Assembly (NCBI GenBank): GCA_002269645.1
Contig: NIVC01003333.1
Location: 39,703 to 103,702, forward strand
Direction of reading: 5' to 3'
DNA length: 64,000 bases
Source: Macrostomum lignano
Taxonomy: Eukaryota
Both the position numbers and the translations under genes were made by a program. Below the pieces are notes generated by a model that had not been told where the DNA came from, did not search any database, and was given only the letters and a program-made list of their open reading frames with translations. Below, piece by piece: positions 2,270 through 24,944 of this stretch (its first letter is position 1; each line of letters starts with the position of its first letter).

Positions 2270-2369
2270 TTTCATATTCCACACAGAGATCTTTCAGTAA
2301 GTATTGTCAGTAGCATTCTGACGGCGTGAGCTGTGCAGAACGCAGAATAGAACTCGTTGCTTTTCATCT

Positions 2370-2519
2370 CTACCTCCTGCAAGTGTCGCCCTTGCATGAC
2401 GGCGAATCACCGAGGCAGATCTCGTTTATGCAGTAACAGAGTGGACCACAGAGATCATCTGCATTTACAGTTGCCAACAGCGCAACGATGAGGACCAACA
2501 GAGCAAACAGAACTCGCAT
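2370..2519 (-). CDS. Secreted six-cysteine peptide precursor, copy 1 (49 aa)
   Basis: MRVLFALLVLIVALLATVNA-DDLCGPLCYCINEICLGDSPSCKGDTCRR*. Classic signal peptide ending V-N-A, six Cys, C-terminal RR, upstream TATAAATA, downstream AATAAA, no intron. Confidence 0.85.
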   Translation of the reverse strand: MRVLFALLVLIVALLATVNADDLCGPLCYCINEICLGDSPSCKGDTCRR

Positions 2520-2606
2520 GCTGTTTCTTGAAGATGTGAACTTGTTGCAGCCGATAATCTTGTAGGAGGATTTGTAGGCTTGATTTTGTGCCATTGCTCA
2601 GTGTTA

Positions 2607-2614
2607 TATTTATA
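2607..2614 (-). promoter_or_regulatory. TATA box of the peptide gene (conserved in all six copies)
   Basis: TATAAATA on minus strand, about 90 nt upstream of the MRVLF ATG. The predicted TSS (~2580) excludes the upstream MAQNQ ATG at 2594. Confidence 0.7.
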
Positions 2615-3674
2615 GATTCAAGATCCCATAAAACACGGCTGCAATCGTTTAAATCACGCACTGCTTGTCAAGCAGCTCCCAGAAAATTATTCGACTTTCT
2701 GCTCAGGTTGCAATAAATTTTCATGTCCCTGGATTGAGTTTGATTGATGAAGCAGAGTTAATTCGCATGGCGTTAACTAAGATTTGAAATTTTCTCCACG
2801 CCTGCAAAAATAAGCGAAACTGGCTTAGATGCAATCCATCTGCTTTTGAGCTGTGTGCTGGCACGCTGGAGGCTGTTCATACGGACTTTTGTTCGTTACC
2901 ATGACAACAAAATCTCAATCTTTTGCGGTTCCTCCAAAATCTCCTAAAAATCTACCTGTAAATGTTCATATACTACATATACTATATACTATACTCATAT
3001 ACTATACTAGCTAAACAGAGTTTCATGATTGACAAGCTCTTAATCTCTGAAGCTCTTAGATTCCAAGTTCGATGCAAAACAACTCAAGAAGGCGCTATCG
3101 AACGTGACAGAAGCACATGACCGTTGGCCCTGCTTTCAGGAAGCGGCACTGAGCTGGCAACATAAAATTTTGTACAAATTTAGTCGAAAATTAAAAAATC
3201 GATCACATATATCTACCGACAAACCATTTTTAGTACGAGTATAGTGTGTTAAATCGACTAACTCTTCGAAACCAACAAGTAATTAAGTAGGCAAAATCGG
3301 ATGTCTGTAGCCTTCAATACCTCTGCGTTCTCGCGAACGCAAACAAAACAAACAAGTTAGCAAAAACACGCTTACCAAAAATCACGCCTTTTTTAATTAT
3401 TATTTAACGTGGGGTGGGGTTAGCAAATTGAGGGGGTTGGCTCATGTACATTAAATCAAGAAAAAATACATGTACAATTAACTAAGTAAAACCCCAAAAA
3501 TATGACAAACAATGAACCTTCAGAACATAGTGGAACTTAAATTTTAACCAAATAATACATACAAGTTCCTCTTATAGACTTTTTATTACATGTATGTCTT
3601 AGAATGGAATCCGAATTTAATGTGTCATATCTCATACAAAATGATAAGAGAAATGATAAGAGTCTGCAGAATTC

Positions 3675-5700
3675 GAGTCAGTAGAGTCGCAGTCAGCAGA
3701 GGCCCAGTCCGAAGAATCCCTGTCAGCAGAGGCCCAGTCAGCAGAGGCCCAGTCAGTAGAGTCCCAGTCAGCAGAGGCCCAGTCAGTAGAGTCGCAGTCA
3801 GCAGAGGCCCAGTCAGTAGAGTCGCAGTCAGCAGAGGCCCAGTCAGCAGAGTCCCAGTCAGCAGAGGCCCAGTCAGCAGAGGCCCAGTCAGCAGAGTCCC
3901 AGTCAGCAGAGGCCCAGTCAGCAGAGGCCCAGTCAGTAGAGTCCCAGTCAGCAAAGGCCCAGTCAGTAGAGTCCCAGTCAGCAGAGGCCCAGTCATAGAG
4001 TCCCAGTCAGCAGAGGCCCAGTCAGTAGAGTCGCAGTCAGCAGAGACCCAGTCAGTAGAGTCCCAGTCAGCAGAGGCCCAGTCAGTAGAGTCCCAGTCAG
4101 CAGAGGCCCAGTCAGTAGAGTCCCAGTCAGCAGAGTCCCAGTCAGTAGAGTCCCAGTCAGCAGAGTCCCAGTCATAGAGTCCCAGTCAGTAGAGTCCCAG
4201 TCAGCAGATTCCCAGTCAGCAGAGGCCCAGTCAGTAGAGTCCCAGTCAGTAGAGTCCCAGTCGGCAGAGGCCCAGTCCTGCAGTAGAGTCCCAGTCAGTA
4301 GAGTCCCAGTCGGCAGAGGCCCAGTCAGTAGAGTCCCAGTCAGTAGAGTCCCAGTCAGTAGAGTCCCAGTCAGTAGAGTCCCAGTCAGCAGAGTCCCAGT
4401 CAGTAGAGTCCCAGTCAGTAGAGTCCCAGTCAGTAGAGTCCCAGTCAGTAGAGTCCCAGTCGGCAGAGGCCCAGTCCTGCAGTAGAGTCCCAGTCAGTAG
4501 AGTCCCAGTCGGCAGAGGCCCAGTCAGTAGAGTCCCAGTCAGTAGAGTCCCAGTCAGTAGAGTCCCAGTCAGTAGAGTCCCAGTCAGCAGAGTCCCAGTC
4601 AGTAGAGTCCCAGTCAGTAGAGTCCCAGTCAGTAGAGTCCCAGTCAGCAGAGTCCCAGTCATAGAGTCACAGTCAGTAGAGTCCCAGTCAGTAGAGTCCC
4701 AGTCAGCAGAGGCCCAGTCAGCAGAGGCCCAGTCAGTAGAGTCGCAGTCAGCAGAGGCCCAGTCAGTAGAGTCCCAGACAGTAGAGTCCCAGTCGGCAGA
4801 GGCCCAGTCAGTAGAGTCCCAGTCAGTAGAGTCCCAGTCAGTAGAGTCCCAGTCAGTAGAGTCCCAGTCAGTAGAGTCCCAGTCAGTAGAGTCCCAGTCA
4901 GTAGAGTCCCAGTCAGTAGAGTCCCAGTCAGTAGAGTCCCAGTCAGTAGAGTCCCAGTCAGTAGAGTCCCAGTCAGTAGAGTCCCAGTCAGTAGAGTCCC
5001 AGTCAGTAGAGTCCCAGTCAGTAGAGTCCCAGTCAGTAGAGTCCCAGTCAGTAGAGTCCCAGTCAGTAGAGTCCCAGTCAGCAGAGTCCCAGTCAGTAGA
5101 GTCCCAGTCAGTAGAGTCCCAGTCAGCAGAGTCCCAGTCATAGAGTCACAGTCAGTAGAGTCCCAGTCAGTAGAGTCCCAGTCAGCAGAGGCCCAGTCAG
5201 TAGAGTCCCAGTCAGCAGAGGCCCAGTCAGCAGAGGCCCAGTCAGTAGAGTCGCAGTCAGCAGAGGCCCAGTCAGTAGAGTCCCAGTCAGTAGAGTCCCA
5301 GTCGGCAGAGGCCCAGTCAGTAGAGTCCCAGTCAGTAGAGTCCCAGTCAGTAGAGTCCCAGTCAGTAGAGTCCCAGTCAGTAGAGTCCCAGTCAGTAGAG
5401 TCCCAGTCAGTAGAGTCCCAGTCAGTAGAGTCCCAGTCAGTAGAGTCCCAGTCAGTAGAGTCCCAGTCAGTAGAGTCCCAGTCAGTAGAGTCCCAGTCAG
5501 TAGAGTCCCAGTCAGTAGAGTCCCAGTCAGTAGAGTCCCAGTCAGTAGAGTCCCAGTCAGCAGAGTCCCAGTCAGTAGAGTCCCAGTCAGCAGAGGCCCA
5601 GTCAGTAGAGTCCCAGTCAGCAAAGGCCCAGTCAGTAGAGTCCCAGTCAGCAGAGTCCCAGTCAGTAGAGTCCCAGTCAGCAGAGGCCCAGTCAGTAGAG
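3675..5700. repeat. 15-bp satellite (CCCAGTCAGTAGAGT)n, ~2 kb
   Basis: Direct tandem array with internal higher-order duplications (e.g. ATAGAGTCACAG variant at ~4661 and ~5140). Confidence 0.95.
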
Positions 5701-6037
5701 TTTTTAATTACGACTTTACTCTCAGAGCTGCTCTCAGAAGTTCGTGAAAGCACGAAAGGGGATGTCAACTTAAGCACCAGAATGGAGCCCGAAGTTCAGC
5801 TCCGGACCAAACCGACTGCAATCGATAACTTGTCGGCCCAGACGACTAGAATCGCCGAGACATCCCATCCGGGTCTTTTCCTTGGGGTCCCAGGGGATAA
5901 AGGGGATAAAATGGGGATCTCATGTCAACTTAAGGTTCTGGAATGGAGCCCGAAGTTCAGCTCGGGACCAAAGCGACTGCAATCGATAACTTGTCGGCCC
6001 AGACGACTAGAATCGCCGAGACATTCGCTGTGCCACT

Positions 6038-6857
6038 ATGTTCCGGTATGTCATTGAGTGCTGCTTTGCTGCCATTAGGCAGGACAAATGTTTTAACGAG
6101 AGGCACAAACCGAATCAGTGGCTGCAGTCAGCTGGCTTCAGCGAGCGCAGCCAATTAGACGTTATCGAGAACTCGATGGCAAAGTACAATCGGGCGTTTC
6201 CACGTTTTGAATCATTTAAACAGCTGCCAACGTCATGGACAGGGCTATCGTTGTTCGAATTCGGTCAGAAGTTCATGCGCCGAGTGCTCTTGTCCAATAA
6301 ACTGGACGAAATTGAGCAGCTGCACTTCAACTGTGATCTGACGCGTGTCCCCCCTGCTAACACAACGGCATGGATTGCCGAAAACCCGCTGGATCCAAAA
6401 AGCTCGGGGTTCCCCCGAATTCACACAGAATCTGACAGATGTTTCGGTGGGTCCGTATCAACTATATCAAGCCGATGATTACATTCAAAACATTCGTGTC
6501 AATGAGGTTCTCGGTCTACGAAGGTGACTCCTGGAGAGACTTTGAGTCACTCACATCCGAACTTCCGAGCCACCTCAAGTATTGGAAGTTTCGGTAAGAG
6601 ACGCAGCCAGAAAACTGGAGCAACCGATTCGGTCGGTGGCATCCGTCTTGGATTTTTTCTAGCTGTCGTTTTCTCGCTCCATAATTCGAAATCCTACCGC
6701 GTGATTCTTAAGAGTGAGTGACAGCAGCGGACAATCGCTTTGGTTTTAGAGATCCAGGATTGCAACTTCTTCATGGCTACTACTCGTCAGCAAAAGCTGG
6801 AGGTAGGACTGCAGGCTGCGATTGTCATGTAATGGCAGTGCTCAAACTCCTGGACTG
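6038..6857 (+). pseudogene. Decayed DDE C-terminus plus SWIM-like remnant (copy 2)
   Basis: As copy 1, with one extra C in a C-run (GGGGTTCCCCCG) that shifts the frame. Confidence 0.6.
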
Positions 6858-7072
6858 CTACGCTTACCACCAAGATAGCTATCGAAGGTCTGGTACTAGC
6901 CTTCGCTTTGTTGATTCCGCTCTTCCACGCAGCCTTCCTTGTTGCCAGTCTTCATGCCAGAGAAAATGCTTTACCACAGCAGCGAAAGCCTACTGAGCAA
7001 CAGTTTAGCGGCCAGCAAGAGGCGTTTCAGTCAGCCAGCAGAAGCTCAGGATCCAAGCCTCAGTCTTCAAGA

Positions 7073-7767
7073 GTCTTTGGTCTTCAAAACCATGGTCAGC
7101 AGTGCTACGCAATTGTTTTTGTACTGCTTCACTGCATCAGCAGCAAAGTCCAGCTCTTTCAGCCGCTCAGAGGTGGGGCAGTGAACATCGCAATGACAAA
7201 CCTGATGACGTCTATGGCGACTGAGCAAGCGTAGATCAACTTTTCGAAGCCAACCGAAGCCGATATCCGCAGCAGTTTGCGCCAAGACAGCAACACTGCT
7301 GCTAACAGTGCATTCTGCCAGAGTCGCAGCAGCAGCGTCATTGCCTAATCGAATTTACACGTGCGGTAGTTGCCTGACTAGCACGGATGAGCTGCCCATA
7401 GGAGTTCTGGATAGTCGTATCCTCAGCATCTCCTTGCAGGAGTTTTCAACCGCGCCGTTAATTCTAGACGGTCTCTACGCTGCTTTTACGGCACCAAAGC
7501 ACGTCCCATGCACCAACACCAACTGTGCAGCTGATCAGGTCTCTAACGGCAGAGTGACCCTGATGCATATAGATCGCATTGGAACCGATGGTCAAAAACT
7601 GAATACGCAAGTCTGTTGGACAATCCGAGCAGGTAACATCTCCAGCTTGGGATGTCCAATGTTCACAGTGTCCCATTACGGTATAGTACGCCCTTGGAAG
7701 GGCACTATACATCTTGTGTCCTGAAAGATAGAGTATGGAATAAGCTGGACGACATGAGAGTTCCAAA
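7073..7767 (+). pseudogene. Decayed USP/C19 peptidase remnant (copy 2)
   Basis: Same Cys box and His box as copy 1. Confidence 0.7.
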
Positions 7768-8361
7768 AAACTACAATCCATTCGTTCATGAGCAATCCAA
7801 GGACCACTGAAGTCACTTCATTAAACTTAGTTGTCCTTGGAGCCCTGCTGCAAGTATAAAGAGACCCATGGGATCATCTGCGAGAATGTTTACACAAAAA
7901 CCCTTTCTGCAAACTAATGACCATACCGTTTCATTTTGTTTAAAAAAGCATCCGGAGCCTTGCTTTGGGCTCCATTCTAGAGACTTAAGTTGACATGAGA
8001 TTCCCATTTTATCCCCTTTATCCCCTGGGACCCCAAGGAAGGGACCCGGATGGGATGTCTCGGCGATTCTAGTCGTCTGGGCCGACAAGTTATCGATTGC
8101 AGTCGGTTTGGTCCGGAGCTGAACTTCGGGCTCCATTCTGGTGCTTAAGTTGACATCCCCTTTGCTCTCAGAGTTTCTTCCCCAAAACAAGAAAAGCCAA
8201 GAAACAGCGCTTAATGCAATCACCGAAGTGAACTCGGATATTCGAAAAGTCACTGTTTATTTTTCATATTCCACACAGAGATCTTTCAGTAAGTATTGTC
8301 AGTAGCATTCTGACGGCGTGAGCTGTGCAGAACGCAGAATAGAACTCGTTGCTTTTCATCT

Positions 8362-8511
8362 CTACCTCCTGCAAGTGTCGCCCTTGCATGACGGCGAATC
8401 ACCGAGGCAGATCTCGTTTATGCAGTAACAGAGTGGACCACAGAGATCATCTGCATTTACAGTTGCCAACAGCGCAACGATGAGGACCAACAGAGCAAAC
8501 AGAACTCGCAT
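8362..8511 (-). CDS. Secreted six-cysteine peptide precursor, copy 2
   Basis: Translation identical to copy 1. Confidence 0.85.
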   Translation of the reverse strand: MRVLFALLVLIVALLATVNADDLCGPLCYCINEICLGDSPSCKGDTCRR

Positions 8512-9665
8512 GCTGTTTCTTGAAGATGTGAACTTGTTGCAGCCGATAATCTTGTAGGAGGATTTGTAGGCTTGATTTTGTGCCATTGCTCAGTGTTATA
8601 TTTATAGATTCAAGATCCCATAAAACACGGCTGCAATCGTTTAAATCACGCACTGCTTGTCAAGCAGCTCCCAGAAAATTATTCGACTTTCTGCTCAGGT
8701 TGCAATAAATTTTCATGTCCCTGGATTGAGTTTGATTGATGAAGCAGAGTTAATTCGCATGGCGTTAACTAAGATTTGAAATTTTCTCCACGCCTGCAAA
8801 AATAAGCGAAACTGGCTTAGATGCAATCCATCTGCTTTTGAGCTGTGTGCTGGCACGCTGGAGGCTGTTCATACGGACTTTTGTTCGTTACCATGACAAC
8901 AAAATCTCAATCTTTTGCGGTTCCTCCAAAATCTCCTAAAAATCTACCTGTAAATGTTCATATACTACATATACTATATACTATACTCATATACTATACT
9001 AGCTAAACAGAGTTTCATGATTGACAAGCTCTTAATCTCTGAAGCTCTTAGATTCCAAGTTCGATGCAAAACAACTCAAGAAGGCGCTATCGAACGTGAC
9101 AGAAGCACATGACCGTTGGCCCTGCTTTCAGGAAGCGGCACTGAGCTGGCAACATAAAATTTTGTACAAATTTAGTCGAAAATTAAAAAATCGATCACAT
9201 ATATCTACCGACAAACCATTTTTAGTACGAGTATAGTGTGTTAAATCGACTAACTCTTCGAAACCAACAAGTAATTAAGTAGGCAAAATCGGATGTCTGT
9301 AGCCTTCAATACCTCTGCGTTCTCGCGAACGCAAACAAAACAAACAAGTTAGCAAAAACACGCTTACCAAAAATCACGCCTTTTTAAATTATTATTTAAC
9401 GTGGGGTGGGGTTAGCAAATTGAGGGGGTTGGCTCATGTACATTAAATCAAGAAAAAATACATGTACAATTAACTAAGTAAAACCCCAAAAATATGACAA
9501 ACAATGAACCTTCAGAACATAGTGGAACTTAAATTTTAACCAAATAATACATACAAGTTCCTCTTATAGACTTTTTATTACATGTATGTCTTGGAATGGA
9601 ATCCGAATTTAATATGTCATATCTCATACAAAATGATAAGAGAAATGATAAGAGTCTGCAGAATT

Positions 9666-9916
9666 CGAGTCAGAAGAGTCCCAGTCAGCAGAGGCCCAGT
9701 CAGCAGAGGCCCAGTCAGCAGAGGCCCAGTCAGTAGATTCCCAGTCAGCAGAGGCCCAGTCAGCAGAGGCCCAGTCAGTAGAGTCCCAGTCAGCAGAGGC
9801 CCAGTCAGTAGAGTCCCAGTCAGCAGAGTCCCAGTCAGCAGAGGCCCAGTCATAGAGTCCCAGTCAGCAGAGGCCCAGTCATAGAGTCCCAGTCAGCAGA
9901 GGCCCAGTCAGTAGAG
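9666..9916. repeat. 15-bp satellite array (short)
   Basis: Same unit as 3675-5700, ending at the same GAG|TTTTTAATTACGAC junction. Confidence 0.95.
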
Positions 9917-10414
9917 TTTTTAATTACGACTTTACTCTCAGAGCTGCTCTCAGAAGTTCGTGAAAGCACGAAAGGGGATGTCAACTTAAGCACCAGAATG
10001 GTGCCCGAAGTTCAGCTCCGGACCAAAGCGACTGCAATCGATAACTTGTCGGCCCAGACGACTAGAATCGCCGAGACATCCCATCCGGGTCCCTTCCTTG
10101 GGGTCCCAGGGGATAAAGGGGATAAAATGGGAATCTCATGTCAACTTAAGGCTCTGGAATGGAGCCCAAAGCAAGGCTCCGGACCAAACCGACTGCAATC
10201 GATAACTTGTCGGCCCAGACGACTAGAATCGCCGAGACATCCCATCTGGGTCTTTTCCTTGGGGTCCCAGGGGATAAAGGGGATAAAATGGGGATCTCAT
10301 GTCAACTTAAGGCTCTGGAATGGAGCCCGAAGTTCAGCTCGGGACCAAAGCGACTGCAATCGATAACTTGTCGGCCCAGACGACTAGAATCGCCGAGACA
10401 TTCGCTGTGCCACT

Positions 10415-11234
10415 ATGTTCCGGTATGTCATTGAGTGCTGCTTTGCTGCCATTAGGCAGGACAAATGTTTTAACGAGAGGCACAAACCGAATCAGTGGCT
10501 GCAGTCAGCCGGCTTCAGCGAGCGCAGCCAATTAGACGTTATCGAGAACTCGATGGCAAAGTACAATCGGGCGTTTCCACGTTTTGAATCATTTAAACAG
10601 CTGCCAACGTCATGGACAGGGCTATCGTTGTTCGAATTCGGTCAGAAGTTCATGCGCCGAGTGCTCTTGTCCAATAAACTGGACGAAATTGAGCAGCTGC
10701 ACTTCAACTGTGATCTGACGCGTGTCCCCCCTGCTAACACAACGGCATGGATTGCCGAAAACCCGCTGGATCCAAAAAGCTCGGGGTTCCCCCGAATTCA
10801 CACAGAATTTGACAGATGTTTCGGTGGGTCCGTATCAACTATATCAAGCCGATGATTACATTCAAAACATTCGTGTCAATGAGGTTCTCGGTCTACGAAG
10901 GTGACTCCTGGAGAGACTTTGAGTCGCTCACATCCGAACTTCCGAGCCACCTCAAGTATTGGAAGTTTCGGTAAGAGACGCAGCCAGAAAACTGGAGCAA
11001 CCGATTCGGTCGGTGGCATCCGTCTTGGATTTTTTCTAGCTGTCGTTTTCTCGCTCCATAATTCGAAATCCTACCGCGTGATTCTTAAGAGTGAGTGACA
11101 GCAGCGGACAATCGCTTTGGTTTTAGAGATCCAGGATTGCAACTTCTTCATGGCTACTACTCGTCAGCAAAAGCTGGAGGTAGGACTGCAGGCTGCGATT
11201 GTCATGTAATGGCAGTGCTCAAACTCCTGGGCTG
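10415..11234 (+). pseudogene. Decayed DDE C-terminus plus SWIM-like remnant (copy 3)
   Basis: Near-identical to copy 2. Confidence 0.6.
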
Positions 11235-11449
11235 CTACGCTTACCACCAAGATAGCTATCGAAGGTCTGGTACTAGCCTTCGCTTTGTTGATTCCGCTCT
11301 TCCACGCAGCCTTCCTTGTTGCCAGTCTTCATGCCAGAGAAAATGCTTTACCACAGCAGCGAAAGCCTACTGAGCAACAGTTTAGCGGCCAGCAAGAGGC
11401 GTTTCAGTCAGCCAGCAGAAGCTCAGGATCCAAGCCTCAGTCTTCAAGA

Positions 11450-12144
11450 GTCTTTGGTCTTCAAAACCATGGTCAGCAGTGCTACGCAATTGTTTTTGTA
11501 CTGCTTCACTGCATCAGCAGCAAAGTCCAGCTCTTTCAGCCGCTCAGAGGTGGGGCAGTGAACATCGCAATGACAAACCTGATGACGTCTATGGCGACTG
11601 AGCAAGCGTAGATCAACTTTTCGAAGCCAACCGAAGCCGATATCCGCAGCAGTTTGCGCCAAGACAGCAACACTGCTGCTAACAGTGCATTCTGCCAGAG
11701 TCGCAGCAGCAGCGTCATTGCCTAATCGAATTTACACGTGCGGTAGTTGCCTGACTAGCACGGATGAGCTGCCCATAGGAGTTCTGGATAGTCGTATCCT
11801 CAGCATCTCCTTGCAGGAGTTTTCAACCGCGCCGTTAATTCTAGACGGTCTCTACGCTGCTTTTACGGCACCAAAGCACGTCCCATGCACCAACACCAAC
11901 TGTGCAGCTGATCAGGTCTCTAACGGCAGAGTGACCCTGATGCATATAGATCGCATTGGAACCGATGGTCAAAAACTGAATACGCAAGTCTGTTGGACAA
12001 TCCGAGCAGGTAACATCTCCAGCTTGGGATGTCCAATGTTCACAGTGTCCCATTACGGTATAGTACGCCCTTGGAAGGGCACTATACATCTTGTGTCCTG
12101 AAAGATAGAGTATGGAATAAGCTGGACGACATGAGAGTTCCAAA
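11450..12144 (+). pseudogene. Decayed USP/C19 peptidase remnant (copy 3)
   Basis: Same Cys box and His box as copy 1. Confidence 0.7.
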
Positions 12145-12738
12145 AAACTACAATCCATTCGTTCATGAGCAATCCAAGGACCACTGAAGTCACTTCATTA
12201 AACTTAGTTGTCCTTGGAGCCCTGCTGCAAGTATAAAGAGACCCATGGGATCATCTGCGAGAATGTTTACACAAAAACCCTTTCTGCAAACTAATGACCA
12301 TACCGTTTCATTTTGTTTAAAAAAGCATCCGGAGCCTTGCTTTGGGCTCCATTCTAGAGACTTAAGTTGACATGAGATTCCCATTTTATCCCCTTTATCC
12401 CCTGGGACCCCAAGGAAGGGACCCGGATGGGATGTCTCGGCGATTCTAGTCGTCTGGGCCGACAAGTTATCGATTGCAGTCGGTTTGGTCCGGAGCTGAA
12501 CTTCGGGCTCCATTCTGGTGCTTAAGTTGACATCCCCTTTGCTCTCAGAGTTTCTTCCCCAAAACAAGAAAAGCCAAGAAACAGCGCTTAATGCAATCAC
12601 CGAAGTGAACTCGGATATTCGAAAAGTCACTGTTTATTTTTCATATTCCACACAGAGATCTTTCAGTAAGTATTGTCAGTAGCATTCTGACGGCGTGAGC
12701 TGTGCAGAACGCAGAATAGAACTCGTTGCTTTTCATCT

Positions 12739-12888
12739 CTACCTCCTGCAAGTGTCGCCCTTGCATGACGGCGAATCACCGAGGCAGATCTCGTTTATGC
12801 AGTAACAGAGTGGACCACAGAGATCATCTGCATTTACAGTTGCCAACAGCGCAACGATGAGGACCAACAGAGCAAACAGAACTCGCAT
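12739..12888 (-). CDS. Secreted six-cysteine peptide precursor, copy 3
   Basis: Translation identical to copy 1. Confidence 0.85.
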   Translation of the reverse strand: MRVLFALLVLIVALLATVNADDLCGPLCYCINEICLGDSPSCKGDTCRR

Positions 12889-14043
12889 GCTGTTTCTTGA
12901 AGATGTGAACTTGTTGCAGCCGATAATCTTGTAGGAGGATTTGTAGGCTTGATTTTGTGCCATTGCTCAGTGTTATATTTATAGATTCAAGATCCCATAA
13001 AACACGGCTGCAATCGTTTAAATCACGCACTGCTTGTCAAGCAGCTCCCAGAAAATTATTCGACTTTCTGCTCAGGTTGCAATAAATTTTCATGTCCCTG
13101 GATTGAGTTTGATTGATGAAGCAGAGTTAATTCGCATGGCGTTAACTAAGATTTGAAATTTTCTCCACGCCTGCAAAAATAAGCGAAACTGGCTTAGATG
13201 CAATCCATCTGCTTTTGAGCTGTGTGCTGGCACGCTGGAGGCTGTTCATACGGACTTTTGTTCGTTACCATGACAACAAAATCTCAATCTTTTGCGGTTC
13301 CTCCAAAATCTCCTAAAAATCTACCTGTAAATGTTCATATACTACATATACTATATACTATACTCATATACTATACTAGCTAAACAGAGTTTCATGATTG
13401 ACAAGCTCTTAATCTCTGAAGCTCTTAGATTCCAAGTTCGATGCAAAACAACTCAAGAAGGCGCTATCGAACGTGACAGAAGCACATGACCGTTGGCCCT
13501 GCTTTCAGGAAGCGGCACTGAGCTGGCAACATAAAATTTTGTACAAATTTAGTCGAAAATTAAAAAATCGATCACATATATCTACCGACAAACCATTTTT
13601 AGTACGAGTATAGTGTGTTAAATCGACTAACTCTTCGAAACCAACAAGTAATTAAGTAGGCAAAATCGGATGTCTGTAGCCTTCAATACCTCTGCGTTCT
13701 CGCGAACGCAAACAAAACAAACAAGTTAGCAAAAACACGCTTACCAAAAATCACGCCTTTTTTAATTATTATTTAACGTGGGGTGGGGTTAGCAAATTGA
13801 GGGGGTTGGCTCATGTACATTAAATCAAGAAAAAATACATGTACAATTAACTAAGTAAAACCCCAAAAATATGACAAACAATGAACCTTCAGAACATAGT
13901 GGAACTTAAATTTTAACCAAATAATACATACAAGTTCCTCTTATAGACTTTTTATTACATGTATGTCTTAGAATGGAATCCGAATTTAATATGTCATATC
14001 TCATACAAAATGATAAGAGAAATGATAAGAGTCTGCAGAATTC

Positions 14044-14295
14044 GAGTCAGAAGAGTCCCAGTCAGCAGAGGCCCAGTCAGCAGAGGCCCAGTCAGCAGAG
14101 GCCCAGTCAGTAGAGTCCCAGTCAGTAGAGTCCTAGTCAGCAGAGGCCCAGTCAGCAGAGTCCCAGTCAGTAGAGTCCCAGTCAGTAGAGTCCCAGTCAG
14201 TAGAGTCCCAGTCAGTAGAGTCCCAGTCAGTAGAGTCCCAGTCAGCAGAGTCCCAGTCAGTAGAGTCCCAGTCAGCAGAGGCCCAGTCAGTAGAG
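14044..14295. repeat. 15-bp satellite array (short)
   Basis: Same unit. Confidence 0.95.
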
Positions 14296-14553
14296 TTTTT
14301 AATTATGACTTTACTCTCAGAGCTGCTCTCAGAAGTTCGTGAAAGCACGAAATTTGCTCTCAGAGTTTCTTCCCCAAAACAAAAAAAGCCAAGAAACAGC
14401 GCTTAATGCAATCACCGAAGTGAACTCGGATATTCGAAAAGTCACTGTTTATTTTTCATATTCCACACAGAGATCTTTCAGTAAGTATTGTCAGTAGCAT
14501 TCTGACGGCGTGAGCTGTGCAGAACGCAGAATAGAACTCGTTGCTTTTCATCT

Positions 14554-14703
14554 CTACCTCCTGCAAGTGTCGCCCTTGCATGACGGCGAATCACCGAGGC
14601 AGATCTCGTTTATGCAGTAACAGAGTGGACCACAGAGATCATCTGCATTTACAGTTGCCAACAGCGCAACGATGAGGACCAACAGAGCAAACAGAACTCG
14701 CAT
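14554..14703 (-). CDS. Secreted six-cysteine peptide precursor, copy 4 (unit without the Spy-like insertion)
   Basis: Identical translation; AAATTT site empty at 14350-14355. Confidence 0.85.
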   Translation of the reverse strand: MRVLFALLVLIVALLATVNADDLCGPLCYCINEICLGDSPSCKGDTCRR

Positions 14704-15534
14704 GCTGTTTCTTGAAGATGTGAACTTGTTGCAGCCGATAATCTTGTAGGAGGATTTGTAGGCTTGATTTTGTGCCATTGCTCAGTGTTATATTTATAGA
14801 TTCAAGATCCCATAAAACACGGCTGCAATCGTTTAAATCACGCACTGCTTCTCAAGCAGCTCCCAGAAAATTATTCGACTTTCTGCTCAGGTTGCAATAA
14901 ATTTTCATGTCCCTGGATTGAGTTTGATTGGTGTATTAGAGTTATTTTGGATACATACATGTAGATAGATACCTACCGACAAACAATTTTTAACATATTG
15001 ACTAGCCATTTAGCCCCCCCCCGGCTGGGGGGCCATAAAAATGACACAAATTGGTTTTTATTTTGGCCCAAAGGTAACCATTAATTTCCATTTCCATTAA
15101 TAAAAAATTAAGTTTTCTGATTTTGGCAAAAATAAATTGACATGAATCAAAACTTACACCAGCCAAAAAAGTTTCCTTCATCAGGCCAAAACCCTTTTTC
15201 AATCAGCAAATATTCTTATCCTTTCAAGCACAAACTCTTAAAACATGTCGTCATTGGCCTGGGCATATTCTGGTCCGCAGCAGGAGCTCAATATGCCAAT
15301 CCCTGACGGCCTTACACCTCTCTTTTTTAGCCAAAGTCAAAGAACCAATAAGCATTAACCTTCAATAAATACGCTGGTATTTCCTATATTTCCTATTAGC
15401 AGAAATCAGCATCACTTGTGTGTACTATTTCAATATCAAATATTCAAATTAAATGAGCTACTTGTGCCATACTACTTGACGATCTGACAATCGCTCAACA
15501 ATCCAACCCCCTCCCCCAACAATTCAGCGATCCT

Positions 15535-18193: not shown

Positions 18194-18388
18194 TGCCAGT
18201 CAGTAGAGTCCCAGTCAGTAGAGTCCCAGTCAGCAGAGGCCCAGTCAGCAGAGGCCCAGTCAGCAGAGGACCAGTCAGCAGAGTCCCAGTCAGCAGAGGC
18301 CCAGTCAGCAGAGGCCCAGTCAGCAGAGGACCAGTCAGCAGAGTCCCAGTCAGTAGAGTCCCAGTCAGTAGAGTCCCAGTCAGTAGAG
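18194..18388. repeat. 15-bp satellite array
   Basis: Same unit, followed by the same anchor and an empty AAATTT site (18443-18448). Confidence 0.95.
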
Positions 18389-18566
18389 TTTTTAATTATG
18401 ACTTTACTCTCAGAGTTGCTCTCAGAAGTTCGTGAAAGCACGAAATTTGCTCTCAGAGTTTCTTCCCCAAAACATAAAAGCCAAGAAACAGCGCTTAATG
18501 CAATCACCGAAGTGAACTCGGATATTCGAAAAGTCTTCATTAAAGCTAACAAACGGTCGATACCAG

Positions 18567-19631
18567 GTGGGTATTCCTTGGAAGCCAGAGGCAAAAGTTC
18601 ACTCGAATAACTATGAGATGGCAATCAAACGGCTTTGCAACACGGAGACCCGGTTGAAGAAGGATCTGGAGGTGGAAAAGCAATACCAAGCATGTCTAGA
18701 GCGATATGAGCAGCAATGTTACATCTGGCGCGTTGCAGCAGAAGAGCTCTCGGCCAGAAGGTGTTTCCTGCCGCATTTCCCGATCTACAAGCTGACGACA
18801 GAGGTTCGGATCGTCTTCAATGCCTCAGCGGACTTCAGCAAGCCTGTTCAAATTTTCGAGTTCAACCGCATCGTTTTCGGCAACTTGAGCTCGCCGTTTC
18901 TTGCTCAGTTCGTAGTTCGTGAGCATGCAGAACGCCTGAAAGAAGAGCTGTCGTTAGCTGCAGATGCTGTTCTCAACTCCACCAATGTGGACGATTGCTT
19001 AGATTCGGTCGGGTCAAAGACTGAGGCGATCCAGCTGTTTCAAGAGTTGAAGACTCCCTGGGAGCGTGCAGGCATGCACCGCAGGAAATGGATGTCCAAT
19101 TTGCGAGAACTGTTGAGCAGAGTGCCACCAGAAGATCCAGTAGCGGAAGTAACATTGGAAGTGACACCGGCGCCATCCGTCAAGACGCTTGGTGTAGGAT
19201 GGAGAGGCGATCGGAACGAGTGCGCTTTTAAAGTTGACCAACCGTTAGCTGCGAACCGCATCGGAGAGACCAAGTCCGTCAGAGATCCGGACCAGTGGAG
19301 GTGTGTCACGACCGAAGTCCATCCAGCCGACGCGTTGTCTCGAGGCACTTCAGCGAAGCAGCTGACGGAGGCTGACAGCTGGTGGCATGGACAAAGGGTG
19401 ACTGGTCGGAGCACAGTCGTTAGCATCAATGAGGAACGATCGGCGGTCAGACGATCAGACCCGGCCATGGCGACCAGGTTCTCGAGCTCAAAGCGGCGCA
19501 TCTGCATGCAAGGCGAGGCAGCTCGATTCGCGACCACCCGCTGGCTGCCGCGGAGAGACGGGTGCGAGTTGCAAATGAGCAGCTGGTTGGCAAGGCCCCC
19601 GCGAGGCCGACTGCGAGGCTGCGTCCGCTAA
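18567..19631 (+). pseudogene. Internally deleted BEL/Pao LTR-retrotransposon pol fragment (RT plus RNase H/A17 region)
   Basis: [49 protein letters not shown] (YVDD equivalent), KWMSN, KTLGVGW, HPADALSRG...WWHG. These are Pao-typical motifs with large internal deletions. Confidence 0.85.
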
Positions 19632-20684: not shown

Positions 20685-21107
20685 GTAGCGCTGGAGACTG
20701 TAGCCGTGATGCCAATAGCGCTCATTACAGTTAGCGCTGGAGACAGTGGCCGTGATGCCAATAGCGCTCATTACAGTTAGCGCTGGAGACAGTAGCCGTG
20801 ATGCCAATAGCGCTCATTACAGTTAGCGCTGGAGACAGTGGCCGTGATGCCAATAGCGCTCATTACAGTTAGCGCTGGAGACAGTGGCCGTGATGCCAAT
20901 AGCGCTCATTACAGTTAGCGCTGGAGACAGTAGCCGTGATGCCAATAGCGCTCATTACAGTTAGCGCTGGAGACTGTAGCCGTGATGCCAATAGCGCTCA
21001 TTACAGTTAGCGCTGGAGACTGTAGCCGTGATGCCAATAGCGCTCATTACAGTTAGCGCTGGAGACAGTAGCCGTGATGCCAATAGCGCTCATTACAGTT
21101 AGCGCTG
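20685..21107. repeat. 46-bp tandem repeat (~9 copies)
   Basis: CTGGAGACAGTAGCCGTGATGCCAATAGCGCTCATTACAGTTAGCG; period 46 measured at 20705/20751/20797. Confidence 0.95.
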
Positions 21108-21816
21108 AAGCTCGCTGGTGAAGGATGCTGAGACTCTCTGAGCTGCTTTCGCACGACTCCACACGCCCTTCCCTCTGCCTACCCTCCCGCTTTGTACGAT
21201 TCTGATGTACATGTCTAGGCGGCATCTATAGGATGTTTACACACACGGCTCAGAGCCCCAGGTAGACAGGTGTAAGCGGGTACAGCCACAGGGGTGTTTT
21301 TATAACGAGCTGAGTCAATTACGAGCTGTTACTGAAGTCAGCGTGGCTGAATCGCTTCCCACACGAAAGTGAACATGCAGGACACAGAGTGCACCTAAGT
21401 TTCAGACAGAATATTTGCTCTGAATTAGCAATTCAGAGGCTTGTAAATGCAACTTTGCAAAATTTTTATCAATTCTAAAGAAACTAAAGAAATCTCAATT
21501 GATTTTCTAAGCGATCTAGCAATGAAAACGCGATTGTAGCAGATAAAACGGCAAAAAGTTTTTAATTACGACTTTACTCTCAGAGTTGCTCTCAGAAGTT
21601 CGTGAAAGTACGAAATTTGCTCTCAGAGTTTCTTCCCCAAAACAAGAAAAGCCAAGAAACAGCGCTTAATGCAATCACCGAAGTGAACTCGGATATTCGA
21701 AAAGTCACTGTTTATTTTTCATATTCCACACAGAGATCTTTCAGTAAGTATTGTCAGTAGCATTCTGACGGCGTGAGCTGTGCAGAACGCAGAATAGAAC
21801 TCGTTGCTTTTCATCT

Positions 21817-21966
21817 CTACCTCCTGCAAGTGTCGCCCTTGCATGACGGCGAATCACCGAGGCAGATCTCGTTTATGCAGTAACAGAGTGGACCACAGAG
21901 ATCATCTGCATTTACAGTTGCCAACAGCGCAACGATGAGGACCAACAGAGCAAACAGAACTCGCAT
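21817..21966 (-). CDS. Secreted six-cysteine peptide precursor, copy 5 (type-B unit)
   Basis: Identical translation; empty AAATTT site at 21613-21618. Confidence 0.85.
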   Translation of the reverse strand: MRVLFALLVLIVALLATVNADDLCGPLCYCINEICLGDSPSCKGDTCRR

Positions 21967-22780
21967 GCTGTTTCTTGAAGATGTGAACTTGTTGCAGCCG
22001 ATAATCTTGTAGGAGGATTTGTAGGCTTGATTTTGTGCCATTGCTCAGTGTTATATTTATAGATTCAAGATCCCATAAAACACGGCTGCAATCGTTTAAA
22101 TCACGCACTGCTTGTCAAGCAGCTCCCAGAAAATTATTCGACTTTCTGCTCAGGTTGCAATAAATTTTCATGTCCCTGGATTGAGCTTGATTGATGGTTT
22201 AGAGTTAATTCGCATGGCGTTAACTAACATTTGACATTTTCTCCACCCCTGCAAAATAAGCGAAACTGCATTTGAACTGTGCGCAGGCACGCTGGAGGCT
22301 GTTCACAAGGACTTTTTCTCGTTGCCGAGGCATCAAAACTCTCACCTGCGTGCCGGTTCCTCCAAAATCTAAAAATCGACCTGTAAATGTTCACATACGC
22401 TCGTAAGCTAAACAGATTTTGATGGATTGACAAGCTCTTAATCTCTTAAGCTCTTAGATTTCAACTTCGATGCAAAGCAACTCAAGGGGGCGCTAACGCA
22501 CATGACGGAAGCACATGACCGTTGGTTCTGCTTTCAGGAAGCGACACTGAGCTGCCCACATAACATTTTGTACAAATTGAGTCTCAAATTCTGAATTCAA
22601 TCGCACATTCCTACCGACAAATCAATTTTAGTACGAGTATATAGAATTTAAATTTTCACACAATAACAGATAAAAGAATTCCTTTATAGAATTTTCATTC
22701 ATGTCGTAGAATGAAATTCGTATGTAATGTGTCATATCTCATACACACTGATAAGAGAAATGATAAGAGTCTGCAGAATT

Positions 22781-22941
22781 TCAGTCAGTAGAGTCCCAGT
22801 CAGTACAGTCCCAGTCAGCAGAGTCCCAGTCAGCAGAATTCCAGTCAGTAGAGTGCCAGTCAGCAGAGTGCCAGTCAGTAGAGTGCCAGTCATTAGAGTG
22901 CCAGTCAGTACAGTCCCAGCCAGCAGAGTCCCAGTCAGTAG
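22781..22941. repeat. 15-bp satellite, diverged short array
   Basis: CCAGTCAGTAGAGT(C/G) units. Confidence 0.9.
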
Positions 22942-23189
22942 AAAAACTGTGAAGTTAAGTTCAGTGTGTTGGCGCAGCTCCACACAGCTTCTCCTTTGAT
23001 GAGGATGCATGCTCCGCGCCGTGGGCTTGCCTTGGCGGCTTTTCTTTCAGCGAGGCCACTTCTGCTGTCTAAGGCCCTGCCTGACCGAGAGAGGGCCTTG
23101 GTGAGAGTCACTGTCAGTTTTGGTATCACTGTCTTATGATGAGAGTCACCGTCCATCTTGGCGGGTATCGGTGTCTCTCATGATTAGAG

Positions 23190-23890
23190 TCACTGCAGTA
23201 TCTCTTGGTGAATTTCACTGTCTCGCATGGTGAGTGTCACTGTCTCTCATGGTGCGTGTCACTGTCTCTCATGGTGAGTGTCACTGTCTCTCATGATGAG
23301 TGTCACTGTCTCTCATGGTGCGTGTCACTGTCTCTCATAGTGAGTGTCACTGTCTCTCATGGTGCGTGTCACTGTCTCTCATGGTGAGTGTCACTGTCTC
23401 TCATGATGAGTGTCACTGTCTCTCATGGTGCGTGTCACTGTCTCTCATAGTGAGTGTCACTGTCTCTCATGGTGAATTTCGCTATCTCTCATGGTCAGTG
23501 TCACTGTCTCTCATGGTGAGTGTCACTGTCTCTCATGGTGCGTGTCACTGTCTCTCATGGTGAATTTCGCTGTCTCTCATGGTGAATTTCGCTGTCTCTC
23601 ATGGTTAGTGTCACTGTCTCTCATGGTGCGTGTCACTGTCTCTCATGGTGAGTGTCACTGTCTCTCATGGTGAATTTCACTTTCACTCATGGTGAGTGTC
23701 ACTCTCTCTCATTGTGAATTTCACTGTCACTCATGGTGAATTTCACTGTCTCTCATGGTGAGTGTCACTGTCACTCATGGTGAGTGTCACTGTCTCTCAT
23801 GGTGAATTTCACTGTCACTCATGGTGAGTGTCACTGTCAGTTTAAGTGAGCGCCACTGTCTCATGATGAGTGCCTCATCTCTGGTGAGTG
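23190..23890. repeat. 22-bp satellite (CTGTCTCTCATGGTGAGTGTCA)n
   Basis: Tandem 22-mers with variants. Confidence 0.9.
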
Positions 23891-23925
23891 TCAGTAGTTT
23901 CTCTTTTGGGGAGTGTCACTTCAGT

Positions 23926-24310
23926 TAGCCCTGGAGACAGTAGCGGTGATGTCAATAGCACTCATGACAGCCCTGGAGACAGTAGCGGTGATGTCAATAG
24001 CAATCATGACAGCCCTGGAGACAGTAGCGGTGATGTCAATAGCACTCATGACAGCCCTGGAGACAGTAGCGGTGATGTCAATAGCACTCATGACAGCCCT
24101 GGAGACAGTAGCGGTGATGTCAATAGCACTCATGACAGCCCTGGAGACAGTAGCGGTGATGTCAATAGCACTCATGACAGCCCTGGAGACAGTAGCGGTG
24201 ATGTCAATAGCACTCATGACAGCCCTGGAGACAGTACCGGTGATGTCAATAGCACTCATGACAGCCCTGGAGACAGTAGCGGTGATGTCAATAGCAGCTC
24301 ATGACAGCCT
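23926..24310. repeat. 42-bp tandem repeat (~9 copies)
   Basis: GCCCTGGAGACAGTAGCGGTGATGTCAATAGCACTCATGACA. Confidence 0.95.
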
Positions 24311-24794
24311 ATGCCTTCCTATGCCTGAATCGCTTCTCACACGAAAGTGAACATGCAGGACACAGAGTGCACCAAAGTTTTGGACAGAATATTTGCTCTG
24401 AATTAGCAATTCAGAGGCTTGTAAATGCAACTTTGGAAAATTTTTATCAATTCTGAAGAAACTAAAGAAATCTCAATTGATTTTCTAAGCGATCTAGCAA
24501 TGAAAACGCGATTGTAGCAGATAAAACGGCAAAAAGTTTTTAATTACGACTTTACTCTCAGAGTTGCTCTCAGAAGTTCGTGAAAGTACGAAATTTGCTC
24601 TCAGAGTTTCTTCCCCAAAACAAGAAAAGCCAAGAAACAGCGCTTAATGCAATCACCGAAGTGAACTCGGATATTCGAAAAGTCACTGTTTATTTTTCAT
24701 ATTCCACACAGAGATCTTTCAGTAAGTATTGTCAGTAGCATTCTGACGGCGTGAGCTGTGCAGAACGCAGAATAGAACTCGTTGCTTTTCATCT

Positions 24795-24944
24795 CTACCT
24801 CCTGCAAGTGTCGCCCTTGCATGACGGCGAATCACCGAGGCAGATCTCGTTTATGCAGTAACAGAGTGGACCACAGAGATCATCTGCATTTACAGTTGCC
24901 AACAGCGCAACGATGAGGACCAACAGAGCAAACAGAACTCGCAT
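24795..24944 (-). CDS. Secreted six-cysteine peptide precursor, copy 6 (type-B unit)
   Basis: Identical translation; 2978 bp from copy 5; empty AAATTT site at 24591-24596. Confidence 0.85.
   Translation of the reverse strand: MRVLFALLVLIVALLATVNADDLCGPLCYCINEICLGDSPSCKGDTCRR

What the first reader, a model, noticed from the sequence alone, without database searches (positions are those of the whole stretch)
2370..24944. Six-copy amplified gene for an unrecognised secreted six-cysteine peptide
Seen: six copies (ATG at 2519, 8511, 12888, 14703, 21966, 24944) encode an identical 49-aa precursor: a 20-aa signal peptide plus DDLCGPLCYCINEICLGDSPSCKGDTCRR. Each copy keeps its TATA box and AATAAA and has no intron. 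The mature peptide is 29 aa, with Cys spacing C-x3-C-x-C-x4-C-x6-C-x4-C, five acidic and three basic residues, and a C-terminal RR that carboxypeptidase could trim. I do not recognise the family. Inference: it is net anionic, so not a typical cationic antimicrobial. A toxin, pheromone, seminal-fluid factor or protease inhibitor under dosage selection is plausible. It is the only intact gene in a 27-kb block of satellites and dead transposons, and ORF callers would mis-start it at MAQNQ.
Basis: partly seen in the sequence, partly recalled or inferred. Interest (0 to 1): 0.85.

Follow-up and report, generated by a model that had tools for sequence, protein, structure and literature searches.

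The report
Tandem array of orphan secreted peptide gene
A flatworm (Macrostomum lignano) genome segment carries six identical, complete copies of a tiny gene for a secreted six-cysteine peptide with no known relatives; the copies are kept identical by gene conversion, and the peptide's job is still unknown.

Summary
Six identical 49-codon ORFs lie on the minus strand at the stated positions. Each sits in a 585-bp core holding a TATA box, a signal peptide, six Cys, a stop and AATAAA. A seventh, truncated copy lies at 18446-18535.

The window is the last 64 kb of Macrostomum lignano contig NIVC01003333.1. A second, colinear contig (NIVC01000907.1) carries seven more copies.

The core is 99.3-100% identical in 12 copies. 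Homologous flanks are only about 80-88% identical or unrelated. This points to gene conversion centred on the transcription unit.

GenBank already lists the gene as a 74-aa hypothetical protein (Mlig011948, e.g. PAA75019.1).

Pfam, two protein databases (5.8 billion cluster representatives by word index; 1.84 billion by HMMER), PDB sequences and Foldseek gave no credible relative. However, the databases appear to hold no other macrostomid.

The six copies are duplicates, and no nucleotide varies inside the CDS, so selection on the coding sequence cannot be shown. Expression site and function are untested.

Verdict: a real, lineage-restricted gene array for a secreted disulfide-rich peptide.

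The parts
2169..2753 (-). Core unit, copy 1 (585 bp): about 140 bp of proximal promoter, TATA, 5'UTR, CDS, 3'UTR, AATAAA and a T/GT-rich downstream element
   Evidence: Defined from the 12-copy alignment and by BLAST of the core
2370..2519 (-). CDS of copy 1, 49 codons plus TAG: signal peptide MRVLFALLVLIVALLATVNA, then the 29-aa six-Cys peptide
   Evidence: AF2 models residues 2-20 as a helix and 28-31/34-37 as a beta-hairpin, pLDDT 78
2607..2614 (-). TATAAATA box of copy 1. It lies 20 nt upstream of the annotated MAQNQ ATG (2594) and 95 nt upstream of the MRVLF ATG (2519)
   Evidence: invariant in all copies
2264..2269 (-). AATAAA polyadenylation signal of copy 1, about 100 nt after the stop codon
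8161..8745 (-). Core unit, copy 2 (CDS 8362-8511)
   Evidence: 99.8% identical to copy 1 over 585 bp
12538..13122 (-). Core unit, copy 3 (CDS 12739-12888)
   Evidence: 99.8% over 585 bp
14353..14930 (-). Core unit, copy 4 (CDS 14554-14703); unrelated upstream flank (type B)
   Evidence: 99.8% over 578 bp; flank type
18446..18535 (-). Truncated seventh copy: only core positions 495-585 (3' end), next to an ORF with a weak RT match
   Evidence: 97.8% over 91 bp; RVT_1, E = 0.023, below threshold. The same fragment is present in the sister contig
21616..22196 (-). Core unit, copy 5 (CDS 21817-21966); upstream flank type A' (about 80-88% identical to type A)
24594..25174 (-). Core unit, copy 6 (CDS 24795-24944); flank type A'
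1..14295 (-). Three head-to-tail segmental units (1-3926, 5992-9916, 10369-14295) about 99.3% identical. Each holds one gene, a 161-bp repeat downstream of it and a 15-bp satellite upstream of it
3676..5701 (.). 15-bp satellite (AGTCAGTAGAGTCCC, 135 copies). Shorter arrays of the same satellite lie 0.8-1.2 kb upstream of every copy and beside the truncated one (9668-9916, 14045-14296, 18196-18389, 22782-22942, 25760-25920)
28761..30685 (-). Exons of a sorting nexin 17-like gene, on the same strand, bounding the array on its upstream side (context only)
   Evidence: Pfam SNX17 F1 FERM 3e-25 and FERM_C 1e-11; same neighbour in the sister contig

Best explanation
This is a real, lineage-restricted gene family of Macrostomum lignano (annotated locus group Mlig011948). 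It is arranged as a head-to-tail array of small single-exon transcription units inside satellite-rich segmental duplications downstream of an SNX17-like gene. Shown: six complete copies plus one truncated copy in the window, seven more in a colinear sister contig, and a 585-bp core that is essentially identical in all copies while the flanks are diverged or unrelated. Inferred: each unit is transcribed from its own TATA promoter, starting at about window 2584 in copy 1, into an mRNA of about 340 nt that ends some 15-30 nt after the AATAAA. Translation then starts at the MRVLF ATG (A at -3), because the MAQNQ ATG lies only 20 nt from the TATA box and is probably upstream of the transcription start. 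The 20-residue signal peptide is cut after VNA (the -3/-1 rule). The 29-residue peptide folds around a CYCI-NE-ICLG beta-hairpin with three disulfides, may lose its C-terminal RR to a carboxypeptidase, and is secreted as an acidic mini-protein of 2.8-3.1 kDa. The copies are kept identical by gene conversion and unequal crossing-over whose tract coincides with promoter plus transcript. This preserves many equivalent templates, so the likely benefit is high output of one invariant product rather than diversification. The invariance and the net negative charge argue against a cationic membrane-lytic antimicrobial peptide and against an arms-race toxin family. An abundant gland secretion acting extracellularly as a ligand, competitor or inhibitor is my best guess. 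Which gland and which target are unknown.
For: Six identical ORFs at the stated coordinates. No other ORF with a signal-like N-terminus and six or more Cys in 64 kb. TATA, ATG context, signal peptide, even Cys count, stop, AATAAA and a T/GT-rich tail are all present and invariant. The core is 99.3-100% identical in 12 copies, while type A versus type A' upstream flanks are 80-88% identical with indels and downstream flanks are unrelated. At 15% flank divergence about 87 differences would be expected in 581 bp, but at most 2 are seen (P about 5e-35). The edge copy g8 is identical for core positions 1-378 and then about 7% diverged, which is the pattern expected when array ends escape homogenisation. 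The exact protein is annotated in GenBank/UniProt as BOX15_Mlig011948g8. That annotation derives from transcript assemblies (de novo transcripts or StringTie models at RPKM of at least 0.5), with repeat-overlapping models removed (PMC5730564). The sister contig NIVC01000907.1 is colinear at about 98-99% identity and has the same order of junction types. AF2 single-sequence models reach pLDDT 76-78 with a signal helix and a hairpin.
Against: No direct RNA or peptide evidence could be reached. The locus name was not found in any paper's main text or in the held supplements of six papers. No nucleotide varies within the CDS among the 12 core-identical copies, so purifying selection on the protein cannot be demonstrated. 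The five or so variable core sites all fall outside the CDS, which is not significant (P about 0.23 by my own hand calculation). The identity is equally compatible with neutral gene conversion. No homologue was found in any database, so there is no cross-species conservation. The upstream MAQNQ ATG has a strong Kozak context (G at -3, G at +4), and the transcript-based annotation used it. Signal-peptide cleavage, disulfides and RR trimming are inferred; no SignalP run was possible.
Confidence: 0.7

Rival explanations
1. The ORF is a non-functional passenger. A chance or decayed ORF sits in a repeat unit that was recently amplified and is homogenised neutrally by gene conversion. Any transcripts are low-level read-through, and no peptide is made.
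For: No CDS site varies, so there is no selection signal. The region is packed with satellites and duplications, where conversion and unequal crossing-over are expected anyway. No homologue was found anywhere. No expression record was found in the papers searched.
Against: The homogenised tract coincides with a complete promoter-to-poly(A) unit rather than with the duplication units, whose flanks differ by type. A canonical signal peptide, a -3/-1 cleavage site, an even number of Cys, TATA and AATAAA at the right distances are unlikely to occur together by chance; there were no other such ORFs in 64 kb. The gene model passed a transcript-based annotation that discarded repeat-overlapping models.
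Confidence: 0.15
2. The annotated 74-aa protein (start MAQNQ) is the true product. The hydrophobic stretch then lies 27 residues from the N-terminus and acts as a signal anchor or a late-cleaved signal, giving a membrane-tethered or differently processed protein.
For: The GenBank/UniProt model is 74 aa. The upstream ATG has G at -3 and G at +4. The transcript models used for annotation evidently included it.
Against: That ATG begins only 20 nt after the first T of TATAAATA. By general knowledge of TATA promoters, metazoan transcription starts about 28-33 nt downstream of that T, so the ATG is probably not in the mRNA. TransDecoder simply takes the longest ORF, and transcript models in arrays can start upstream through read-through. 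The 25-residue extension has an odd Cys and no recognisable feature, and the 74-aa form gets no Pfam hit. If the VNA/DD site is still cleaved, the mature peptide is the same.
Confidence: 0.15
3. The array is an assembly expansion of one or two real copies.
For: Within-class copies are about 99.3% identical. The Mlig_3_7 assembly is known to contain redundant scaffolds (PMC8629364).
Against: Copies have distinct junction classes: upstream types A, A' and B, and downstream types X and Y. An independently assembled contig shows the same order of classes, with different satellite lengths and 1-2% divergence. The truncated copy is shared by both contigs.
Confidence: 0.03
4. The ORF is a fragment of a transposable element or of a larger known protein.
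For: A sub-threshold RT-like ORF (18567-19631), unassigned ORFs on the opposite strand (47-1732 and its repeats) and a hAT element lie in or near the array.
Against: The ORF is closed by in-frame stops on both sides. The opposite-strand ORFs occur in only three of the six units. There is no Pfam hit and no credible database hit. The single sub-threshold-looking hit, P0003, is a 2-Cys repeat protein that scores only by summing eight repeats. No terminal repeats or element boundaries are shared by the copies.
Confidence: 0.03

Closest known systems
Dosage-type tandem arrays of near-identical small secreted-protein genes (human alpha-defensin DEFA1A3 repeat, fish antifreeze-protein arrays). Named from my own knowledge, not from a tool result.
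   Same: Head-to-tail copies on one strand. Each copy is a complete small gene for a signal-peptide-bearing, disulfide-rich or abundant secreted product. Copies are kept nearly identical, and unit lengths differ between the two assembled versions of the locus.
   Different: No sequence relationship. The peptide here is acidic and has no propeptide. Copy-number polymorphism and a dosage effect were not measured. Homogenisation is confined to a 585-bp core inside heterogeneous units rather than covering the whole repeat unit.
Inhibitor-cystine-knot (knottin) and conotoxin-type six-Cys mini-proteins
   Same: About 30 residues, six Cys, secreted through a signal peptide, and a predicted beta-hairpin core.
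   Different: The loop lengths 3-1-4-6-4 violate the knottin consensus CX3-7CX3-6CX0-5CX1-4CX4-13C, recalled from memory, at loops 2 and 4. There is no Pfam toxin, knottin or conotoxin hit at E up to 10, no PDB sequence hit and no Foldseek hit. There is no propeptide, and the paralogues are not hypervariable.
Lineage-restricted secreted gland transcripts of M. lignano (for example the prostate-limited putative seminal-fluid transcripts of Weber et al. 2018, PMC5977470)
   Same: Same organism. These are generally secreted products without known relatives, reported from gland cells (abstract seen).
   Different: Neither the peptide, its DNA nor the locus name occurs in the three held supplementary files of that paper. 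The tissue of expression of this gene is unknown.

Membership tests
Inhibitor cystine knot / knottin | Six Cys with loop lengths within CX3-7CX3-6CX0-5CX1-4CX4-13C (consensus recalled from memory) | tested here: not met
   The observed loops are 3,1,4,6,4. Loop 2 is too short and loop 4 too long.
Inhibitor cystine knot / knottin | I-IV, II-V, III-VI disulfide connectivity with a knotted topology | not testable with these tools
   The AF2 output gives only secondary structure. Foldseek against PDB returned nothing, which is uninformative for a 30-mer.
Curated families of toxins, defensins, conotoxins, pacifastin, Kazal and disintegrins (Pfam-A) | A match to any Pfam profile | tested here: not met
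   hmmscan of the 49-aa and 74-aa forms at E up to 10 found 0 families.
CS-alpha-beta defensins | Cys pattern C...CxxxC...C...CxC (recalled from memory) | tested here: not met
   Here the CxxxC and CxC motifs overlap at the N-terminus (C4-x3-C8-x-C10), and three more Cys follow.
Secretory-pathway precursor (classical signal peptide) | Basic n-region, hydrophobic h-region of 7-15 or more residues, and small residues at -3/-1 of the cleavage site | tested here: met
   M-R; VLFALLVLIVALLATV (mean Kyte-Doolittle hydropathy 3.2); V-N-A before DD. AF2 models residues 2-20 as a helix. No SignalP run was possible.
Concertedly evolving tandem gene array | Paralogues far more similar to each other than their homologous flanks are | tested here: met
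   The core is 100/100 identical in five consecutive 100-bp windows, against 80-92% identity or unalignable sequence in the flanks. Twelve copies are 99.3-100% identical. The edge copy is diverged only in its outer half.
Concertedly evolving tandem gene array | Amplification serves dosage, i.e. expression scales with copy number | not testable with these tools
   No expression or read-depth data were accessible.
Expressed protein-coding gene | Transcript evidence | tested here: inconclusive
   A GenBank CDS exists (PAA75019.1), and that annotation was built from transcript assemblies. No reads, expression values or in situ data for this locus could be retrieved.
Expressed protein-coding gene | Purifying selection on the CDS (dN/dS below 1) or conservation in other species | tested here: inconclusive
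   There are no substitutions in the CDS among 12 copies. The only change is the last codon of g8, RR to RV. The databases appear to hold no other macrostomid: a control query with the neighbouring LDLa-domain gene returned only M. lignano entries.

The most novel reading that the evidence does not exclude
The peptide could be the still-unidentified small negatively charged releasing factor of the flatworm duo-gland adhesive system. The current model for M. lignano proposes that the releasing gland secretes an unknown negatively charged substance that displaces the positively charged cohesive protein Mlig-ap1 (PMC9229212). A secreted, disulfide-stabilised acidic mini-protein (pI about 4; net charge about -2, or about -4 after RR trimming) made from many identical gene copies fits the broad description. 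More generally, it may be a new disulfide-rich fold that arose de novo in satellite-rich DNA. Nothing here ties it to the tail plate. Its charge density is far below that of heparin, which was used as the mimic in that work.
Probability: 0.04. Interest if true: 0.8.

Novelty: new variant of a known kind. Interest (0 to 1): 0.35.

Why it matters
If expressed as inferred, this is an uncharacterised disulfide-rich mini-protein scaffold with an unusual Cys framework (3-1-4-6-4), made by a genetically tractable flatworm in which transgenesis, RNAi and in situ hybridisation are routine. It is also a clean small example of gene conversion confined to a promoter-plus-transcript core inside otherwise diverging duplications. 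Finally, it is a case where the public annotation probably has the wrong start codon, which hides the signal peptide from secretome screens. It does not by itself answer a long-standing question. Its value depends on where it is expressed.

Tried and rejected
1. Word-index protein search with the 49-aa precursor at E up to 10: only the window's own 74-aa protein.
2. Full HMMER scan of 1.84 billion cluster representatives: self plus P0003. P0003 is a 627-aa protein with eight 'ACGTLGYSFQKICLQNK' repeats and only two Cys per repeat. I rejected it as a summed low-complexity match.
3. Pfam at E up to 10, PDB sequences at E up to 10, and Foldseek against PDB with both the precursor and the mature models: nothing.
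4. tblastn of the precursor against the window and all fetched loci for diverged paralogues: only noise.
5. Rfam and tRNA scans, to test whether the core is an RNA gene: nothing.
6. Test for spliced-leader content: one 11-nt match, no full leader.
7. Literature. 'Mlig011948' occurs in no paper's main text. It does not occur in the held supplements of PMC5730564, PMC7336406, PMC12896417, PMC5946080, PMC5977470 or PMC5816591. Three further papers had no supplements held. Two broader keyword searches gave nothing relevant.
8. Attempt to reach a third homeologous array through SNX17: the query found no M. lignano protein, which I cannot explain.
9. Exact look-up of the 49-aa form and of the bZIP ORF in the contig index: not on record.
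10. Pfam on the ORFs between the copies, to verify 'dead transposons': only a sub-threshold RVT_1 match.
11. The KGD tripeptide in the C22-C27 loop recalls KGD disintegrins. There is no Pfam disintegrin match, and a 3-mer is too weak to build on, so I kept it only as a lead.

Full report
**1. Observation**

Reading the minus strand at 2200-2700 shows, in order:
- TATAAATA at 2614-2607
- an ATG at 2594 (MAQNQ...)
- a second ATG at 2519 (MRVLF...)
- a TAG at 2372-2370
- AATAAA at 2269-2264
- a T/GT-rich stretch after that

Six-frame translation finds the exact 29-residue peptide six times, all on the minus strand. The ATGs are at 2519, 8511, 12888, 14703, 21966 and 24944.

I scanned every ATG-started ORF of 35-120 aa in all six frames for a hydrophobic N-terminus plus at least six (even-numbered) Cys. 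Only these six ORFs came back, so the combination is not background noise in this sequence. The six are copies of one sequence and count as one observation.

**2. Source**

The exact 74-aa ORF is held in NCBI assembly GCA_002269645.1, contig NIVC01000907.1. Papers identify that assembly as Macrostomum lignano Mlig_3_7.

A neighbouring LDLa-domain ORF in the window is 100% identical to BOX15_Mlig028963g1 on contig NIVC01003333.1, which is 103,702 bp long. The fetched piece of that contig matches window 57,387-63,712 at 100%. The window is therefore the last 64 kb of NIVC01003333.1, and window position 1 is contig position 39,703.

The array runs to the window's left edge: position 1 lies inside a repeat unit. 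It may continue into the 39.7 kb that I could not fetch.

**3. Architecture**

- Three units (1-3926, 5992-9916, 10369-14295) are about 99.3% identical.
- Copies 5 and 6 form a second pair.
- Copy 4 has its own upstream flank.
- A 15-bp satellite lies 0.8-1.2 kb upstream of each gene. A 161-bp repeat lies downstream of copies 1-3.

Aligning the six window copies with six from the other contig defines a 585-bp core (window 2753-2169 in copy 1) shared by all. In core coordinates:

| Feature | Core position |
|---|---|
| TATA box | 140 |
| Upstream ATG (MAQNQ) | 160 |
| MRVLF ATG | 235 |
| Stop codon | 382-384 |
| AATAAA | 485 |

- A truncated seventh copy (core 495-585) lies at 18446-18535, next to an ORF with a sub-threshold reverse-transcriptase match.
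- An SNX17-like gene bounds the array upstream on the same strand, in both contigs.

**4. Second array**

NIVC01000907.1 is colinear with the reverse of the window at about 98-99% identity. It differs mainly in satellite lengths. It carries seven copies, with ORF starts near 33.0, 36.6, 44.1, 48.5, 72.9, 77.2 and 83.3 kb.

The Mlig_3_7 assembly is known to contain duplicated large-chromosome sequence and redundant scaffolds (PMC8629364). The two arrays may therefore be homeologous or allelic versions of one locus, and 13 is not a haploid copy count.

The shared order of distinct junction classes argues against an assembly expansion.

**5. Concerted evolution**

Between a type A unit (copy 1) and a type A' unit (copy 5):
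- Five consecutive 100-bp windows across the core are 100% identical.
- The homologous upstream flank is 80-92% identical with large indels.
- The downstream flank is unrelated.

At 15% divergence about 87 differences would be expected in 581 bp. At most 2 are seen (P about 5e-35).

Synonymous sites and UTRs are identical too, so purifying selection alone cannot explain this. Gene conversion or unequal exchange must be homogenising the core.

The terminal copy of the other array (g8, PAA75019.1) is identical for core positions 1-378. It then shows 13 mismatches and 2 gaps over the 3'UTR, starting in the last codon (RR to RV). This is what is expected of an array edge that escapes homogenisation on its outer side.

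The homogenised tract coincides with promoter plus transcript. That is suggestive of selection for intact units, but it is not proof.

**6. Is it a gene?**

*For*
- The full set of signals is present at sensible spacings: TATA, A at -3 of the MRVLF ATG, a canonical signal peptide with V-N-A before the cleavage site, an even Cys count, a stop, AATAAA about 100 nt later, and a T/GT-rich downstream element.
- GenBank carries a CDS for it, and the Mlig_3_7 annotation was derived from transcript assemblies. TransDecoder called the ORFs, and repeat-overlapping models were removed (PMC5730564).
- The locus name ends in g8, which implies at least eight loci in one 95%-identity transcript cluster.

*Against or unknown*
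- I could not retrieve any read-level, expression-level or in situ evidence. The locus name occurs in no main text and in none of the supplements held.
- No CDS site varies among 12 copies. The roughly five variable core sites all fall outside the CDS, which is not significant (P about 0.23 by my own arithmetic).

**7. Which start codon?**

The annotated 74-aa form starts at the upstream ATG, which has a strong context (G at -3, G at +4). However, that ATG begins only 20 nt after the first T of the TATA box.

From general knowledge of TATA promoters, transcription starts about 28-33 nt downstream of that T. The upstream ATG is therefore probably not in the mRNA.

If the VNA/DD site is cleaved, the mature peptide is the same under either start.

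**8. Relatives**

No credible relative was found by any method:
- Word-index protein search: self only.
- Full HMMER scan of 1.84 billion representatives: self plus one spurious repeat protein.
- Pfam at E up to 10: none.
- PDB sequences: none.
- Foldseek against PDB with two AF2 models (pLDDT 78 and 76): none.
- tblastn against all DNA held for diverged paralogues: none.

One caveat matters. A control query with the neighbouring LDLa-domain gene returned only M. lignano entries from NCBI and UniRef. The databases therefore seem to lack other macrostomids and transcriptome-derived proteins. 'Orphan' here means no relative outside the species in databases without close relatives. In addition, a 29-residue query has little power against billions of sequences.

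**9. Comparison with known kinds**

The product resembles knottin- or conotoxin-type six-Cys mini-proteins in size and secretion. Its loops (3-1-4-6-4) break the knottin consensus, and no profile matches. I therefore do not file it in any family.

The genomic arrangement works like the dosage-type arrays of near-identical small secreted-protein genes, such as human DEFA1A3 or fish antifreeze arrays (named from my own knowledge). The dosage effect itself is untested.

The invariance of the copies and the net negative charge (pI about 4.4) argue against a cationic antimicrobial peptide or a diversifying toxin family.

**10. Function**

I commit to this much: it is a secreted, disulfide-stabilised acidic mini-protein made in quantity by some gland and acting extracellularly.

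The most novel reading not excluded is that it is the unknown negatively charged releasing substance postulated for temporary adhesion in M. lignano (PMC9229212). I give this about 4%, because nothing links the gene to the tail plate.

A KGD tripeptide in the C22-C27 loop recalls KGD disintegrins. It is only a 3-mer, and there is no profile match.

**11. Verdict**

- The gene exists in public annotation as a hypothetical protein, probably with the wrong start.
- It represents a new variant of a familiar kind: a lineage-restricted secreted Cys-rich peptide in a concertedly evolving tandem array.
- Interest is moderate (0.35).
- The decisive data are RNA 5' and 3' ends, in situ pattern, congeneric transcriptomes and mass spectrometry. 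All are standard for this model organism, and none was reachable here.

Noticed in passing
window 2709-2719 and the same core position in all six copies (8701, 13078, 14893, 22156, 25134): An 11-nt string AATTTATTGCA, identical to part of the M. lignano spliced leader (CGGTCTCTTACTGCGAAGACTCAATTTATTGCATG, PMC8629364), sits about 100 nt upstream of the TATA box and is preceded by AAACTCAAT (the leader has AGACTCAAT). It occurs nowhere else in the window (expected 0.03). There is no full leader: 0 hits for the 18-mer at up to 3 mismatches. Probably coincidence.
   Followed up: partly
window 18446-19631: A truncated seventh gene copy (only the last 91 bp of the core) abuts a 354-aa ORF on the plus strand with a sub-threshold RVT_1 match (E = 0.023). 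To my eye the ORF looks BEL/Pao-like ('VRIVFNASA'). The same truncated fragment exists in the sister contig, so the disruption predates the split between the two loci.
   Followed up: partly
window 47-1732 (+), repeated at 6038-7724 and 10415-12101: A run of ORFs of 92-162 aa on the strand opposite the peptide gene, present only in the three type A units. They have no Pfam match even at E up to 10. One contains a CxC...CxxxH motif reminiscent of a SWIM finger. Origin unknown.
   Followed up: partly
window 3676-5701; sister contig loci L002 (from about 13.0 kb to its end) and L001 (start to about 8.9 kb): The 15-bp satellite AGTCAGTAGAGTCCC is 2 kb long in the window. In NIVC01000907.1 it spans at least 7 kb and 9 kb at the two ends of an unfetched gap. 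This is a large length difference between the two versions of the locus.
   Followed up: partly
window 29451-30685 (-): The ORF that carries the SNX17 F1 FERM exon runs straight into a translated 28-bp tandem repeat (29746-30201). The repeat is presumably intronic, and ORF lists here are inflated by satellites.
   Followed up: no
window 33830-36729 (+): A hAT-family transposon remnant (Dimer_Tnp_hAT, E = 8e-6) split over several ORFs.
   Followed up: no
window 55493-55960 (-) and 59387-61030 (-): A bZIP-domain ORF (E = 8e-9) and a large exon of an LDLa-domain protein. The latter is annotated as BOX15_Mlig028963g1, and a 97%-identical copy (g3) sits on a 316-kb contig, which implies a third version of this chromosomal region.
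   Followed up: partly
window 62212-62617 and 53774-54792: An almost perfect 8-bp microsatellite (ATCAAGCT, 51 copies, 99% matches) and a 19-bp repeat array of 53 copies.
   Followed up: no
SNX17 exon, window 29717-30685; locus L004 1-2085: A 135-aa query from the SNX17 F1 FERM exon found no M. lignano protein in the 5.8-billion-cluster protein database. This is odd, because a 495-aa SNX17 product is on record as a called gene in the sister contig. I have no explanation for this gap in the database or index.
   Followed up: no
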